64,000 bases of DNA from Thalia democratica. Taxonomy: Eukaryota. The stretch covers positions 36,332,001 through 36,396,000 of the forward strand of contig OZ241829.1 in assembly GCA_965202585.1 (NCBI GenBank), written 5' to 3'. The notes under the pieces are model-generated. The model did not search any database and had not been told where the DNA came from. It was given only the letters and a program-made list of their open reading frames with translations. The translations under genes and the position numbers were made by a program. Positions 94-63,745 of the stretch are shown here, piece after piece (position 1 is the stretch's first letter; each line of letters begins with the position of its first letter).

Positions 94-3000
94 AATGACT
101 TGAAATCAAAACAAGAAAGGCTTATCAATCAACTCACTAAACAAATAATAAAAGGCTGTGGCCCTCCGACAAGATCACTAGTAGGAACTTGCCTTGCCTC
201 TTTGTATAAAGTATGTGAGTGCTACACTGCATATAAAACAATTGACAAATGCAATGAGCTTATAAAAAGTAAAGATGATTCCCCTAGCTACTTATCAACT
301 AGACTGTTAGTGTTTTTTTTAAACTTTTGATAAGTAGTATTTAGATGTTACAAAAAATAATTGAGTAAAATATAAGTAGTTAACTCTGAAAATTTAAGTT
401 CACTATTTATTTTGTAACTTTAAGTTTTGTTAATTTACTATAAATTTTTGAAGTAAAATAACTAAACTTATTATATCATTAAAATGTTTTAATTAGTTCG
501 TTCGTTTTGATTTAACATTTAAATGTTCTTTAATAAAGATTAAAATATTATCAAATTTATCTTGATTAAAGTAGTTTTTATATGCACATTTTAGGTGCTT
601 TCTATATTTTGTGTTAAATCCTATTTTTTGGTATTGTGACTTTTTATGATCACTTAATATTTTACTGGAAGTCATTGCTAAGTAAGTCTTGTAAAAATCT
701 TTGAATTTTTGTTTGTAGGTATAACAAACACACAGAATGTTTTTTGTTTAAAGGTGTACTTTATTTAAAGATTATTTCTTATTCATTAAATATTTTTTTT
801 ACTATTCAAACTTTATGTTTTATGTAAAATAATTCTTATTTAAAATAAAGCAAAACAAGCAATAAACGTTAAACTCATATAAAGAAAATTTTAGTGAAGC
901 ACATATTCACGTAGTTTAAATGGATACTTTATGTTTTAGCACAGCAATTGTCACTGTGGGAATAATGTATGAAACACAAGGAAGACTAGTTAGTTTGTTT
1001 CTTTTAAGTATCTTAAAATTTTCAATTTGTTCACAACTTTACTTCTTAATTGAGGCACGTACAAAGTTTTGTTTTGAGTTAAATTTTGAACTTCAATTTA
1101 AATACAAATTATAAATGTTTTTTATCTAACTTTTGGTTTTTTAAAGTAAAATTTTTAGTACCATTTCGAGTAAAAATAATTACTAAATAAAAAAAAAAAA
1201 GTTTAAAATTTATTTTTTTACTACAAATAATAAAATCCTTGTTTTTTAAATTTATGTTAATGTTATAGTATTAATATAGATAAGCTATTGAAAGTATAGA
1301 GTTTTTAGTAAATACTTCAGTATTTAATTTAAGTTAGGAGCCTCGTACCAAACTACTGTGCAAGTCCTTTTAAAAGGCCTAAAAAATGCCGAGTCTCAAA
1401 CAAGGTCGGAGACAATGCTGGCGCTGAAGTCAATTCTTTCAGGTCTTGGAAGTTCTGCTAACATGTGCCACAGGGATGTTTACAAGGCTGCCAAACTGTG
1501 TCTAGTAGATAGTCGACAGACTGTTAGAACCTCGGCTGCTCAGGTATAGTTTGCTTACAGTTTTTTTTTGTGTTTTTAAAAGATACACACTTTTACTTTT
1601 TATACACTGTTAAGTGATAAAAATTTTGATGAAAACCTTTTTTTTTTAAGTAACTAATTTCAGTATGAACTTTTCAGTGTCTGACAGAGTTGATAAAAGA
1701 AAGTGCTTTTATCTATTCAAGCGAGTTTGAAGTGCTGGTTCATCATTGTGTGAGGGCTTTAGATGCTTCAACCTATGAGTCAAGAAGTGTGATAGCAAGG
1801 CTGCTTGGAAATTTAGTTGCAGGAACAATGAACAGAAATATTAATGGTTATTTTTTATTATGTTTTGGTATAAGATTCTTAGGTTCAATTCTAAGTTTTC
1901 ATATAAAGTCAAACAAAACAAAATGATAAATACAAATTACATAATTTGTTAAACCTACATTGTTTTTTTCAACTAACAACTTATAATTTTATACTACTAC
2001 TTATAGTTACAAAAGGAAAGAAAACAACGCTTAAAGAAGCGTTTAATTCATTGGAGAACGGATTTATAAATGCTGGTTCAACAGGTGGAGCTAGGGAGCT
2101 TTTAAAAGGCAGCTCAAGTAAATAAATATAATATTGTATATAATATATACTGTAACATTAATATCAATGTTTTAGAAGCTTATTTTAAGAAAACAGACAA
2201 TGAATTTGATTTAAATTTAAATAATATTTGAATACTTAAAGACAGTAAAATAATCTTAAACTAACTGAAAAAAATTTATAGTATGAATAAAATAGTAGTA
2301 TTTTTGTTTTAAATTAATTAAAAAACAACTAGCTTGAATGGTAATACATGATTATATTCAAAGTTTTATTATTCAAATAACGTCAATGATAAGCTTAAAA
2401 AATTTATTTTGTTAACTAAAAAGAAAATTACTAAAAACTTATAGCTACATATTTATTATAGAAAATGAACGTAGTATGTGTGCACATTTTTTATATTGTA
2501 AACAAATTTAAAGTGGTATTGAAATGTATAAAATAGTTAACAATTCTAGAGAAACGTTTTAAGTTTTCTTTTACAAAATATTTAAATTTTCTCATTCATA
2601 GTTACAATTTGATCGTTAGCTAAAAGAGTTCTAGAAATTCCTAACCAGTACCCAAACTTTTGTAAATTTTCAATTAACTAACTTAAACTATTTTGTTGAT
2701 ACTAGTAACAATTTTAAAATGCAGTAACTTCACTGCGGAGCATAAGGGTTGGTGTCACTGAAGCTTATGTTGAATTTGTGCGCGAAGTCGGAAGCGATTG
2801 GTTGTGCAAAAATCTTGCTAGCTTCATCAACAAAGTTCTTCATATACTGACTAATCCAAAGGTTTAAAGAAGAATTTTTTAATGACTGCTGAAATATTTT
2901 TATTATTACTTGTAACTGGTGTTAGATTTTTTATGGTGTGTTTAGAAAAATTTGATGAAACAAACTGGGTTTGTTTTGTCTTTTAAGCTTTCAATTATGC

Positions 3001-63200: not shown

Positions 63201-63745
63201 TTTCTAAACTTATAAATTTGATATTTTGTTTTACACTAAGAGACTTCAACTACAAGCTTGATTTAAAAATTTAAAGTTAATTAGAAAAAATTTAAAAATT
63301 TAAACTTTTACAACTGATGTCTTTTCCAATGAAAAATATGTAATAAAGTATCAAAAAATTTGTAGAAGTTGCTTTAGCAATCATAAATAGTTTAGACGTA
63401 CTAACTGGTTAAAAACTAAATCGATAATTTTAGTGGTAGAATTTATAGTATTTTGAGCATTTTAAAATAATAAAACACATTATTACGAATACTTCATGCA
63501 CATTTTAGTCCAAAACAAATCAACTACTTGCAAACCTATGAACGGCGATTAAACTACTTACTCATAAAACAATCTACAAAACTCACAATGTCTTCCACGT
63601 ACTCGGTGTTGGCTTCGTCTTGCGTCGACTGGTTGAGCCGCTGCAGCAGAAATATTCTCAGCGACTCGCACTCCATCAGCCTCCTGACCTTCTTGAAGTT
63701 AAACCAGCCCACTCCTTGCCCGTCCAACACGCTTTTGGTTATTTC
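51224..63745 (-). CDS. MADD: MAP kinase-activating death domain protein (MADD/DENN/Rab3 GEF, aex-3 orthologue); 5'-partial, C-terminal ~540 aa
   Basis: Minus-strand core exons 63745-63587, 62452-62299, 62121-61987, 61451-61384, 59312-59180, 55556-55436, 54270-54138, 53424-53233, 53049-52885, 52430-52370, 52014-51908, 51671-51602, 51348-51224 (TAA); 1623 nt in frame. Motifs [127 protein letters not shown]. Confidence 0.95.
55684..56006. mobile_element. hAT-type MITE, same family as 44801-45117, opposite orientation
   Basis: CAGCAATTCTCAACCT start, GGGGTAAA repeats; 8-bp flanks GTCTACAA / GTTTACAA. Confidence 0.75.
56964..57516. mobile_element. MULE-like MITE with arrays of 16-18-bp GCACGAAG subterminal repeats
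   Basis: Imperfect TIRs GGGTAGGAGTCTAATATGCAC / CGGAACGGGTCAAGTATGCAC. Near-perfect 9-bp flanking duplication ATATAAACC / ATGTAAACC. Confidence 0.85.
58379..58474 (-). CDS. MADD: candidate alternative MADD cassette exon (66 or 96 nt, phase 1 to 1)
   Basis: caag|GA acceptor at 58474. Reads (G)[21 protein letters not shown], with in-frame donors at 58409 (gtcaca) and 58379 (gtgtgt). It falls exactly between EGLL and KERS, where vertebrate MADD has an optional LEDAAMETF-containing exon (recalled, not aligned). Confidence 0.7.
60953..60976 (-). CDS. MADD: candidate 24-nt MADD microexon (RSFQLNFK, phase 0 to 0)
   Basis: tttaattatag|AGATCTTTCCAGCTGAATTTCAAG|gtaaat; stop-free in the frame required by the flanking phase-0 junction. 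Confidence 0.45.
61651..61969. mobile_element. MITE with CAGGGTTGCCAAAA termini (reverse orientation of the 41059 family)
   Basis: Perfect 14-bp TIR; flanks TCGTAA / TCGTAT. Confidence 0.8.
62947..63031. repeat. 39-bp perfect tandem duplication
   Basis: TAAAAATTATTTCAATAAAAATCTATAACTAAAATTAAA twice (62947-62985, 62986-63024) plus a partial third copy. Confidence 0.9.

What the first reader, a model, noticed from the sequence alone, without database searches (positions are those of the whole stretch)
94..63745. Exon-scale GC3 mosaic: adjacent exons of one gene differ 2-3-fold in third-position GC, and the shift bleeds into flanking introns
Seen (hand counts of G/C-ending codons): HEATR5 94-305 20/70 (29%) versus 21658-21868 56/70 (80%). 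HEATR5 4801-4912 11/37 (30%) versus the next exon, 272 bp away, 5185-5337 42/50 (84%). BTBD10 37925-38012 8/29 (28%) and 39429-39549 14/40 (35%) versus 40291-40501 66/70 (94%). High-GC exons are CpG-rich (TCG, GCG, ACG, CCG codons) and tend to fall back to A/T-ending codons at their edges. The intron ends in front of them are C/G-enriched (e.g. cattcgttcaaccgcag, catcccgcag, gatttgacgcag, aaacccgaaaacccag), while bulk introns look about 20% GC. Established: translational selection acts on whole mRNAs and isochores act over much larger scales, so neither readily explains this. Inference: a highly local process is at work, such as exon-focused recombination hotspots with GC-biased gene conversion, or exon-specific escape from methylation-driven CpG decay.
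Basis: partly seen in the sequence, partly recalled or inferred. Interest (0 to 1): 0.72.

Follow-up and report, generated by a model that had tools for sequence, protein, structure and literature searches.

The report
Exon-by-exon GC3 mosaic in tunicate
In this very AT-rich genome of a drifting marine tunicate, each coding exon has its own level of G/C at silent codon positions (about 15% to 95%), which jumps at exon borders while introns stay near 23% GC; ordinary codon selection and large-scale base composition cannot explain that.

Summary
First readers of this scan have noted the same exon-by-exon GC3 mosaic in dozens of other windows of this genome.

- **HEATR5:** a 45-exon model built on homologues gives exon GC3 of 0.17-0.84, about five times more spread than chance (p = 2e-27).
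- **BTBD10:** 0.28, 0.25, 0.33, 0.35, 0.66, 0.94, 0.75.
- **Not misassembly:** one metatranscriptome contig joins AT-rich and GC-rich exons.
- **Shape:** the distribution is broad and unimodal, not bimodal.
- **Not composition or length:** amino-acid composition predicts only 0.40-0.49. Exon length explains little.
- **Unit:** two halves of one exon correlate (r = 0.66). Halves facing each other across an intron do not (r = 0.07). The cause therefore sits at DNA or pre-mRNA level, not in translation.
- **Coding only:** the GC-rich state ends at stop codons. It raises flanking intron GC by only about 5 points.
- **CpG decay:** explains a minor part.
- **Derived:** the same 70 BTBD10 codons have GC3 0.94 here, 0.60 in a sister lineage, and 0.44 and 0.30 in two outgroups.

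Best reading (confidence about 0.4): a GC-favouring fixation bias at DNA level, most likely biased gene conversion confined to uninterrupted coding stretches. Selection on pre-mRNA is the main rival. Population data are needed to decide.

The parts
94..23167 (+). HEATR5 gene, 45 coding exons in the window (5' end lies upstream). The stop-free CDS of about 1,972 codons ends at 23164 and the stop codon follows. Exon GC3 is 0.17-0.84, introns are 23% GC.
   Evidence: My own spliced protein-to-genome alignment with 9 full-length homologues. Per-exon table. RNA contigs confirm junctions at 1543|1678, 1846|2007, 3846|4035 and 5185-5337.
94..305 (+). AT-rich HEATR5 exon, GC3 0.29 (20/70), CpG o/e 0.15
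4801..4912 (+). AT-rich HEATR5 exon 11, GC3 0.30
   Evidence: A 110-nt gap in the listed pieces of the RNA contig that carries exon 12 fits this exon.
5185..5337 (+). GC-rich HEATR5 exon 12, GC3 0.84, 272 bp downstream of exon 11. Flanking intron cores are 0.23 and 0.29 GC.
11936..13880 (+). Run of seven HEATR5 exons (18-24) with GC3 0.48-0.75, separated by short introns of 0.15-0.34 GC
   Evidence: Conspecific haplotypes L090 and L091 cover exons 18-20.
21658..21868 (+). GC-rich HEATR5 exon 43, GC3 0.80
37925..41974 (+). BTBD10 gene, seven mapped coding exons: 37925-38012 (0.28), 38260-38347 (0.25), 38680-38788 (0.33), 39429-39549 (0.35), 39992-40089 (0.66), 40291-40501 (0.94), 41745-41971 (0.75)
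   Evidence: Pfam BTB_3 at 38241-38366.
40291..40501 (+). Most extreme exon, GC3 66/70 = 0.94. The orthologous 70 codons have GC3 0.60, 0.44 and 0.30 in three relatives, with unchanged GC at codon positions 1-2.
41745..41974 (+). Last coding exon of BTBD10. The GC-rich state fades about 8 codons before the stop, and the 3' flank is about 30% GC.
51884..63763 (-). MADD exons recognised at open-frame level: 63557-63763 (0.68), 62282-62473 (0.80), 55435-55557 (0.68), 54135-54347 (0.55), 53218-53463 (0.62), 52867-53049 (0.54), 51884-52060 (0.54). No full gene model was built.
   Evidence: Pfam Death_MADD at 54135-54347 and 53218-53463.

Best explanation
**What it is (shown).** A real and, by all signs, genome-wide property of a pelagic tunicate genome. 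The mitochondrial code reads AGR as Gly. The 802 Mb assembly and about 25% GC fit what is published for Thalia democratica, so that identity is an inference. Every uninterrupted stretch of coding DNA has its own silent-site GC level, uniform inside the stretch and uncorrelated with the next exon.

**How it most likely works (inferred).**
1. A strong AT-biased mutation pressure drives all unconstrained DNA to about 22% GC.
2. A GC-favouring fixation bias acts against it on the DNA itself, not on the mature mRNA or on translation.
3. It is effective only inside coding stretches. Its most likely form is GC-biased repair of short recombination heteroduplexes (gBGC).
4. Tracts are kept inside exons because introns and UTRs differ between haplotypes by many indels and 5-6% mismatches, whereas exons differ by about 2% and no indels.
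5. Strength differs from stretch to stretch, with length, with protein-imposed GC at codon positions 1-2, and with local hot or cold state. It also turns over between lineages. Each exon therefore drifts to its own equilibrium.
6. CpG-specific decay adds a smaller extra loss in the AT-rich exons.
For: **1. DNA or pre-mRNA level, not translation.** Two halves of one exon correlate at r = 0.66 (n = 38). Adjacent halves across an intron correlate at r = 0.07 (n = 32). For 20-codon blocks the values are 0.71 and 0.15 (bootstrap P = 0.0016). Arf and actin family genes replicate this (0.80 against 0.36).

**2. Not tied to expression.** Actin exons are 0.31-0.79 and RPL3 exons 0.46-0.80. An ARP1-like gene is 0.89-0.93 and Arl exons reach 0.94-0.99.

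**3. Active and derived.** The same 70 BTBD10 codons have GC3 0.94 here, 0.60 in a sister lineage, and 0.44 and 0.30 in outgroups, with GC12 constant at 0.40-0.46. There are 29-30 window-S/sister-W differences against 1 the other way.

**4. Uniform push towards G and C across codon classes.** The log-odds shift is about 1.4 for C/T-ending and 1.25 for G/A-ending two-fold codons.

**5. Neutral-looking spill-over.** Both C/(C+T) and G/(G+A) rise in the last 20 intron bases while the pyrimidine fraction stays unchanged. There is no link to splice-site strength. Intron-core GC follows flanking GC3 weakly (rho 0.42).

**6. Premise of homology-limited tracts.**
- Conspecific haplotypes differ by 2% and no indels in exons, and by 5-6% plus indels in introns.
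- All 12 listed indels in 6 kb lie in introns.
- Exons separated by introns under 150 nt resemble each other more (r = 0.45 against -0.03; not significant).
- Exons under 130 nt rarely reach GC3 0.6 (4/36 against 16/42).

**7. AT-biased input.** In GC-rich exons 18-20 the reference individual carries the W allele in 9 of 10 W/S differences from a metagenome haplotype. In introns the split is 8 and 7.

**8. Lineage-specific.** Overdispersion (chi2/df) is 5.3 here, 2.2 in the nearest available relative and 1.2 in a distant one.
Against: - No recombination map and no allele-frequency spectra, so gBGC itself is not shown.
- Known conversion tracts (tens to hundreds of bases or more) should also enrich flanking introns and 3' UTRs. 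Here a 182-nt intron between two exons of GC3 about 0.9 stays about 0.2 GC, and GC drops within 50 nt of stop codons. The tract-confinement idea invoked to explain this is my own inference and has no direct test.
- Long intronless reading frames can be uniformly AT-rich (eIF5B paralogue L073, 2.9 kb, GC3 0.21). Length and coding status alone are therefore not sufficient.
- The shift in amino-acid composition relative to homologues is only a trend (rho 0.28, p = 0.07).
- Parsimony polarisation of the BTBD10 differences is weak (8 gains, 4 losses, 12 ambiguous).
- Most statistics rest on one 45-exon gene plus two gene families.
Confidence: 0.4

Rival explanations
1. Selection on silent sites at the pre-mRNA level. 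GC-rich coding stretches are favoured because, in a genome whose introns are recognised as AT-rich, they mark exons. They would also avoid cryptic splice sites, premature polyadenylation signals, or the fate of AT-rich 'unwanted' transcripts. The need differs from exon to exon.
For: - The exon behaves as the unit, with steps at junctions.
- Edges behave differently from interiors.
- Longer exons are more often GC-rich.
- Cryptic sites in 3' UTRs would be harmless, which could explain the drop at stop codons.
- Plants show intron-associated step changes in composition (PMC4684703).
- The unwanted-transcript hypothesis links GC3 to splicing context (PMC11865589).
Against: - No relation between exon GC3 and polypyrimidine content or donor strength (rho 0.03 and -0.09).
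- The relation with protein-imposed GC12 is positive (R2 0.27), not compensatory.
- The same exon with the same structure has GC3 0.94, 0.60 and 0.44 in related lineages. A stable splicing need would not predict that.
- Many exons of 150-210 nt work with GC3 0.24-0.30.
- Intronless genes range from 0.21 to 0.87.
- Non-coding flanks show a small spill-over.
Confidence: 0.25
2. Local differences in mutation bias rather than in fixation. One form is exon-specific escape from methylation-driven CpG decay. Another is lower cytosine deamination where protein-imposed GC, duplex stability or a positioned nucleosome protects the DNA, which would give a self-reinforcing GC state.
For: - CpG o/e is 0.97 in GC-rich exons, against 0.66 in AT-rich exons and 0.63 in introns.
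- In AT-rich exons, third positions that can form CpG have GC3 0.22, against 0.38 elsewhere. In GC-rich exons there is no such gap.
- C5-methyltransferase domains exist in the genome.
- Exon GC3 rises with GC12, and with the GARP-FYMINK balance of the same columns in other phyla (rho 0.47).
- Mean GC3 steps up between the 100-130 nt and 130-160 nt exon-length classes.
- Loss of base-excision-repair genes is reported in thaliaceans (PMC13746493).
Against: - Away from CpG contexts GC3 still differs 0.69 against 0.38.
- Reaching GC3 0.94-0.99 against an intron equilibrium of 0.22 needs a change in mutation bias of 30-fold or more. By my own knowledge, that exceeds reported nucleosome or context effects.
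- The BTBD10 exon has been gaining G/C in this lineage.
- Inside exons, local GC12 does not predict GC3 (r about 0).
- Methylation itself was not measured.
Confidence: 0.15
3. Classical translational selection for G/C-ending optimal codons (speed or accuracy), with intensity varying along the protein.
For: - The effect is confined to translated sequence.
- The favoured codons resemble the optimal sets of other animals.
- GC3 rises slightly with residue conservation, from 0.41 to 0.54.
- In the intronless eIF5B paralogue L074, GC3 is 0.33-0.49 in the first 400 residues and 0.68-0.97 in the rest, which I read as the GTPase and C-terminal domains.
Against: - GC3 jumps at exon-exon junctions, which do not exist in the translated mRNA.
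- Actin and RPL3 are less biased than HEATR5 exon 12 or Arl genes.
- The shift is the same for all codon classes.
- The conservation effect is tiny compared with the mosaic.
Confidence: 0.05
4. Artefact: misassembly, contamination from a GC-richer organism, or chance in small codon samples.
For: Individual exons hold only 30-70 codons.
Against: - chi2 232 on 44 df.
- One RNA contig joins AT-rich and GC-rich exons, and DNA contigs of three independent runs span exon-intron-exon.
- Tara metagenome haplotypes match exons plus introns.
- The CDS is one open frame of about 1,972 codons colinear with homologues.
Confidence: 0.01

Closest known systems
Intron-associated step changes in GC content along plant genes (Ressayre et al. 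2015, PMC4684703)
   Same: Composition is roughly constant within a coding segment and changes in steps at introns, so introns act as barriers. gBGC is invoked for part of the pattern.
   Different: In rice and Arabidopsis the steps form an ordered 5'-to-3' decreasing gradient, strongest in external exons. Here there is no monotonic order (rank correlation with exon index 0.04). Internal exons range from 0.17 to 0.94, and the introns are far more AT-rich.
Episodic GC-biased gene conversion at recombination hotspots in mammals (for example PMC12290510)
   Same: Clusters of W-to-S substitutions at about exon scale that are lineage-specific and turn over between close relatives, like BTBD10 exon 40291-40501.
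   Different: Mammalian episodes affect coding and flanking non-coding DNA alike and add modest GC. Here the effect is almost confined to coding DNA, reaches GC3 above 0.9 and appears to touch a large share of exons genome-wide. No recombination data exist for this animal.
Gap between CDS and genome GC reported for Thalia democratica (PMC13746493)
   Same: The same kind of genome: 25.3% GC, 790.7 Mb, CDS GC about 17 points above genomic GC, and a low, rounded per-gene GC3 peak. This is probably the same species (inference).
   Different: That paper works per gene and per species. It does not report exon-level heterogeneity, steps at junctions, or turnover between lineages.
Differential exon-intron GC architecture and exon definition in animals (PMC3638135; also PMC4338330)
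   Same: Exons are GC-richer than their AT-rich flanking introns, with altered composition at exon edges.
   Different: Those contrasts are moderate and fairly uniform among exons of a region. Here neighbouring exons of one gene differ three-fold in GC3, and splice-site strength does not co-vary.
Isochores and regional GC heterogeneity (vertebrates, honeybee)
   Same: GC3 varies within one genome, with a weak positive link to nearby non-coding GC.
   Different: The scale here is 100-300 bp rather than tens to hundreds of kb. Introns and intergenic DNA barely follow.

Membership tests
GC-biased gene conversion (gBGC) footprint | Excess of W-to-S over S-to-W substitutions in the affected tract on the lineage concerned | tested here: met
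   BTBD10 exon 40291-40501: 29-30 window-S/sister-W differences against 1. GC3 is 0.94 against 0.60, 0.44 and 0.30. Parsimony polarisation is weak (8 gains, 4 losses, 12 ambiguous).
GC-biased gene conversion (gBGC) footprint | Acts on coding and adjacent non-coding sites alike, so flanking intron GC follows GC3 | tested here: inconclusive
   The direction is right (rho 0.42; -11 to -20: 0.29 against 0.12). The size is about a tenth of the GC3 contrast, and 3' UTRs fall to baseline within 50 nt.
GC-biased gene conversion (gBGC) footprint | Association with local recombination rate or hotspots | not testable with these tools
   No genetic map, LD data or pedigree data are available.
GC-biased gene conversion (gBGC) footprint | W-to-S derived alleles segregate at higher frequency than S-to-W | not testable with these tools
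   Only pairwise haplotype comparisons were possible. In GC-rich exons the reference individual carries W in 9 of 10 W/S differences, which fits AT-biased input but gives no frequency spectrum.
GC-biased gene conversion (gBGC) footprint | Also pushes non-synonymous sites towards GC-rich amino acids | tested here: inconclusive
   The GARP-FYMINK shift relative to homologues follows GC3 only as a trend (rho 0.28, p = 0.07).
Translational selection on codon usage | Bias increases with expression level | tested here: not met
   By proxy, actin (0.31-0.79) and RPL3 (0.46-0.80) are no higher than HEATR5 exon 12 (0.84), ARP1-like (0.89-0.93) or Arl exons (0.94-0.99). Expression was not measured.
Translational selection on codon usage | Acts on the mature mRNA, so it should be blind to former intron positions | tested here: not met
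   Within-exon r = 0.66-0.80 against across-junction r = 0.07-0.36.
Translational selection on codon usage | Preferred codons match the tRNA gene pool | not tested
   The tRNA gene set of the 802 Mb genome was not surveyed.
Isochore-type regional composition | Domains of tens to hundreds of kb in which introns, intergenic DNA and GC3 co-vary | tested here: not met
   In 1-kb windows, 61 of 64 lie at 0.21-0.34 GC, and the three higher ones (up to 0.45) hold GC-rich exons. Exon GC3 has lag-1 autocorrelation 0.11.
Methylation-driven CpG depletion | Low CpG o/e in the AT-rich class that accounts for the GC3 difference | tested here: not met
   CpG o/e is 0.66 against 0.97, but GC3 at sites that cannot form CpG still differs 0.38 against 0.69. 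This is a minor contributor only.
Methylation-driven CpG depletion | Cytosine methylation present and different between exon classes | not testable with these tools
   C5-methyltransferase domains are present in the genome. There are no methylation calls.
Intron-barrier step gradients (plants) | Step change of composition at introns with homogeneity inside segments | tested here: met
Intron-barrier step gradients (plants) | Ordered 5'-to-3' decrease, with external exons the most GC-rich | tested here: not met
   HEATR5 rank correlation with exon index is 0.04. 5' exons tend to be AT-rich, and BTBD10, RPL3 and actin rise towards the 3' end.

The most novel reading that the evidence does not exclude
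Recombination heteroduplexes, and hence GC-biased repair, are physically confined to uninterrupted coding homology, because introns and UTRs of this highly polymorphic animal are riddled with indels. If so, the exon-intron structure itself sets the grain of base-composition evolution. Each coding stretch becomes an independent unit whose GC3 records its own conversion history and turns over between sister lineages. This would be a mode of gBGC not described before. It would also give a natural system in which gBGC and selection on silent sites can be separated base by base at exon borders.
Probability: 0.2. Interest if true: 0.85.

Novelty: new variant of a known kind. Interest (0 to 1): 0.62.

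Why it matters
Silent-site composition is routinely used as a neutral yardstick, as a proxy for recombination and as evidence for codon selection. Here the same mRNA carries exons at 17% and 84% GC3, and up to 94% in the neighbouring gene. The jumps sit at former intron positions and the state changes between sister lineages.

- **Models:** any per-gene codon-usage, dN/dS or phylogenomic model will be mis-specified for this clade.
- **Forces:** the force shaping silent sites can be read at single-exon resolution. If the cause is biased gene conversion, the genome gives a sub-kilobase map of past conversion activity and a test of what limits tract length. If it is selection on pre-mRNA, it shows how exons are recognised in an extremely AT-rich animal genome.
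- **Annotation:** GC-based exon finders will systematically miss the AT-rich exons.

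Tried and rejected
**Searches that led nowhere**
- **Naming the species through COX1:** the best hits (87-92% identity) are unnamed marine transcript records. 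Identity therefore rests on the AGR = Gly pattern and on published genome size and GC.
- **Homologue search with HEATR5 exon 43:** no candidates.
- **eEF1A as a high-expression control:** only pseudogene-like copies with a shared in-frame TAA, and an HBS1-like gene, were recovered. Dropped.
- **One relative's contig (P0285):** no DNA was available.

**Explanations tested and rejected or downgraded**
- **Residue conservation as the driver:** only 0.41 to 0.54 across conservation classes, and per-exon rho 0.18 against conservation among homologues. Rejected as the main cause.
- **Amino-acid composition:** rejected.
- **Immediate-neighbour context:** the effect is slightly negative (GC3 0.42 after an S at position 2, 0.49 after a W). 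Rejected.
- **Distance to the exon edge as the source of the length effect:** the profile is roughly flat beyond about 30 nt.
- **Flanking intron length:** rho -0.10.
- **Very short 3' UTRs as the reason for the drop at stop codons:** the first AATAAA/ATTAAA lies at a median of 140 nt, no closer than in random AT-rich DNA. Rejected.
- **RNA- or cDNA-templated conversion:** would give exon-limited tracts, but it should include 3' UTRs, which stay AT-rich. Set aside.
- **Relic of a GC-richer ancestor:** some exons exceed the values of all relatives and the BTBD10 exon is rising. Set aside.

**Limits of the data**
- The nearest available HEATR5 relative (L004, about 65% amino-acid identity) is too diverged to polarise silent changes.
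- Polymorphism from laid contigs was too sparse, with 40 of 263 differences listed.

Full report
**Setting.** The window is 27% GC and has no gaps. It lies on contig 5 of an 802 Mb assembly. The mitochondrial COX1 reads Arg wherever Gly is expected when translated with the standard table, which is the tunicate code. Marine metagenomes and metatranscriptomes hold the sequence. A 2026 comparison of 38 tunicate genomes reports Thalia democratica at 790.7 Mb and 25.3% GC, the lowest of all, with CDS GC about 17 points above genomic GC and a broad GC3 peak (PMC13746493). The identity is therefore probable but inferred, because a COX1 search returned only unnamed relatives. First readers of this scan noted the same exon-by-exon mosaic in dozens of other windows of this genome, 72 notes by one word search.

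**Gene models.**
- **HEATR5.** One exon was searched against protein representatives, which gave full-length HEATR5 homologues. I wrote a spliced protein-to-genome aligner and ran nine homologues against bases 1-27000. The consensus is 45 coding exons, 94-23164, with one open frame of about 1,972 codons.
- **RNA and DNA support.** Contigs of a marine metatranscriptome confirm several junctions. One contig joins 3710-3846, 4035-4149 and 5183-5336, with a 110-nt gap that fits exon 4801-4912. DNA contigs of three other runs span exon 11, its intron and exon 12. Misassembly and contamination are excluded.
- **BTBD10.** Seven coding exons were mapped from in-frame pieces and splice sites.
- **Domains.** Pfam confirms BTB_3 at 38241-38366 and Death_MADD on the minus strand at 53218-54347. 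MADD was used only at open-frame level.

**The observation.**
- All seven hand counts are exact.
- HEATR5 exon GC3 runs from 0.17 to 0.84 (pooled 0.48). Heterogeneity is chi2 232 on 44 df.
- Four-fold sites give the same picture.
- Amino-acid composition predicts only 0.40-0.49 per exon.
- BTBD10 exons are 0.28, 0.25, 0.33, 0.35, 0.66, 0.94 and 0.75. MADD open frames are 0.54-0.80.
- HEATR5 introns are 23.4% GC.
- In a pool of 78 internal exons (HEATR5 plus Arf and actin family genes modelled with paralogous proteins), GC3 is broad and unimodal. Spearman rho with exon length is 0.42 (p = 1e-4). Exons under 130 nt reach 0.6 in 4 of 36 cases, longer ones in 16 of 42.

**Where the signal starts and stops.**
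- **Inside GC-rich exons.** GC3 is lower only in the first and last three codons (0.54 against 0.64-0.75). Once the exon mean is removed, no structure remains inside exons.
- **In introns.** Bases next to GC-rich exons are slightly GC-richer: 0.29 against 0.12 at -11 to -20 (p = 0.0015), 0.256 against 0.207 at -21 to -70 in the pooled set (p = 0.004), and intron-core rho 0.42. This is about a tenth of the GC3 contrast. The spill-over raises both C/(C+T) and G/(G+A) without changing the pyrimidine fraction. Exon GC3 is unrelated to polypyrimidine content or donor strength.
- **At stop codons.** In terminal exons and intronless genes the GC-rich state ends at the stop codon. The last BTBD10 exon shows this. 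An intronless ARL2-like gene has GC3 0.87 with flanks of 0.10-0.30. Five Arf-family terminal exons of GC3 0.82-0.99 have 3' flanks averaging 0.34, then about 0.25.
- **UTR length.** Polyadenylation hexamers are no closer to the stop than in random AT-rich DNA, so the drop lies inside the exon. The unit is the coding stretch rather than the exon or the transcript.

**The junction test.** Two halves of one HEATR5 exon correlate at r = 0.66 (n = 38). The last half of one exon and the first half of the next correlate at r = 0.07 (n = 32). These are contiguous in the mRNA. For 20-codon blocks the values are 0.71 and 0.15 (bootstrap P = 0.0016). Arf and actin genes give 0.80 and 0.36. Anything acting on the mature mRNA or on the protein should not see former intron positions. 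This argues strongly against translational efficiency, accuracy or folding-related codon choice.

**Expression.** Five actin genes (0.31-0.79) and RPL3 (0.46-0.80) are not at the top. An ARP1-like gene (0.89-0.93) and Arl exons (0.94-0.99) are. Residue conservation has only a weak effect.

**Methylation.**
- CpG o/e is 0.97 in GC-rich exons, 0.66 in AT-rich exons, 0.63 in introns and 0.88 in intergenic DNA.
- In AT-rich exons, third positions that can form CpG have GC3 0.22, against 0.38 elsewhere. In GC-rich exons there is no such gap.
- At non-CpG sites the two classes still differ 0.69 against 0.38.
- C5-methyltransferase domains exist in the genome.
- CpG decay is thus a secondary contributor.

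**Other correlates.**
- Exon GC3 rises with GC at codon positions 1-2 (R2 0.27; with log length 0.35). It also rises with the GARP-FYMINK balance of the same alignment columns in homologues from other phyla (rho 0.47). The relation is reinforcing, not compensatory.
- The shift between GC-rich and AT-rich exons is similar for C/T-ending and G/A-ending two-fold codons. This suggests a plain push towards G and C.
- Exons separated by introns under 150 nt resemble each other more (r = 0.45, n = 10) than others (r = -0.03, n = 27). The trend is not significant.
- Two old intronless eIF5B paralogues (69% identical) have GC3 0.21 throughout, and 0.33-0.49 rising to 0.68-0.97 within one reading frame. 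Length and coding status are therefore not sufficient, and heterogeneity can exist without present-day introns. It might be a fossil of a spliced parent gene.

**Relatives.**
- **HEATR5.** A JGI metagenome contig from a related tunicate has identical exon lengths and about 65% amino-acid identity. Its introns are 41% GC and its exon GC3 is 0.39-0.85 (chi2/df 2.2). A more distant relative is homogeneous (1.2). The window scores 5.3.
- **BTBD10 exon 40291-40501.** Tara Oceans contigs of a sister lineage (93% amino-acid identity, introns unalignable) have GC3 0.60 over the same 70 codons. Two further relatives have 0.44 and 0.30, with GC12 constant at 0.40-0.46. Of 34 nucleotide differences from the sister, 29-30 are S here and W there, and 1 is the reverse.
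- **Whole BTBD10 gene.** The 3' exons are 0.66, 0.94 and 0.75 here. They are 0.34, 0.44 and 0.61 in one outgroup, and 0.29 (one fused exon covering the first two) and 0.32 in the other. The GC-rich state is therefore derived, exon-specific and labile. This fits a hotspot-like process better than a fixed functional need.
- **Conspecific haplotypes.** Tara metagenome haplotypes differ from the window by 2% and no indels in exons 18-20, and by 5-6% plus indels in the introns. In those GC-rich exons the reference carries W in 9 of 10 W/S differences. Introns split 7 and 8. That matches an AT-biased mutational input which must be countered if GC3 is to stay high.

**Synthesis.**
- **Shown:** the mosaic is real, coding-limited, uniform within a coding stretch, stepped at introns, unrelated to expression proxies, splice-site strength or amino-acid composition, and evolutionarily labile with net G/C gain in at least one exon.
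- **Inferred:** a GC-favouring fixation bias at DNA level, most simply biased gene conversion.
- **The difficulty:** introns and UTRs stay AT-rich within 20-50 nt of GC3-rich coding DNA. I propose that heteroduplex tracts are limited by the indel-rich, more divergent non-coding DNA, which fits the haplotype data. This has no direct test here.
- **Rivals:** selection on pre-mRNA (exon marking, avoidance of cryptic signals) remains a serious rival. Local mutation-bias differences are a lesser one.

**Prior work.** The closest published parallels are intron-associated step changes in plant genes (PMC4684703) and exon-scale gBGC episodes in mammals (PMC12290510). The library search did not turn up the exon-level pattern for tunicates.

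Noticed in passing
window 305-22900 (HEATR5 donor sites); U1 genes at L080-L083: The fifth... rather, the third intron base is T in 26 of 44 HEATR5 donor sites (GTTAGT/GTTTGT type). My aligner penalised this, and several of these junctions are RNA-supported. The related contig L004 has only A or G there (18 of 18). The genome's U1 snRNA genes begin AAACTTACCTG, with A instead of the usual T at position 2, and donor position +7 is T in 24 of 44. This may be a shifted 5' splice-site code.
   Followed up: partly
window 4100-4700 (HEATR5 intron 10): Contig depth is 30-80 times that of neighbouring DNA in all DNA runs, with many alternative joints. This is a high-copy repeat family inside the intron.
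   Followed up: no
window 8811-9065 (-), inside the 4.8-kb HEATR5 intron 17: An open frame resembling the C-terminal dimerisation region of hAT transposases, GC3 0.32 (recognised by eye, not tested).
   Followed up: no
window 56900-57640, both strands (MADD intron): A tandem array whose translation repeats short peptide-like units (KGPFCTKG / EGSFLH types) in several frames. Most likely a minisatellite rather than coding sequence.
   Followed up: no
L069, L070, L073, L074, L075, L007, L008, L033, L043, L051 (other contigs of the genome): Many genes that are intron-rich in other animals occur as long intronless open frames: EF-G-like 750 aa, HBS1/eRF3-like 427 aa, two eIF5B copies of 967 and 892 aa, eIF2-gamma-like 495 aa, Arf and Arl genes, and an actin-related protein. 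Names are by my reading of the translated peptides, not tested. GC3 ranges from 0.21 to 0.87. This suggests abundant retrogene formation.
   Followed up: partly
G000 contig 1, 49968705-49997951 (L027-L029): Three tandem intronless open frames of 873-878 aa, each with a complete C5 DNA-methyltransferase domain. A fourth sits on contig 467. Their origin (host, transposon or bacterial-like) is unknown.
   Followed up: no
G000 contig 4, 56.84-56.94 Mb (L002, L003) and contig 757: Several nuclear copies of mitochondrial COX1 with many stop codons.
   Followed up: no
L071, L072 (contig 9, 28.06 and 28.13 Mb): Two eEF1A-like copies share the same in-frame TAA and degraded motifs, so they are duplicated pseudogenes. 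The functional eEF1A gene was not among the reported hits.
   Followed up: partly
L084 compared with L088/L089 (relatives' BTBD10): One relative keeps the window's exon structure (109, 121, 98, 211, 203 nt). The other has the same coding region in three fused exons (388, 309, 188 nt), which indicates intron loss in that lineage.
   Followed up: no
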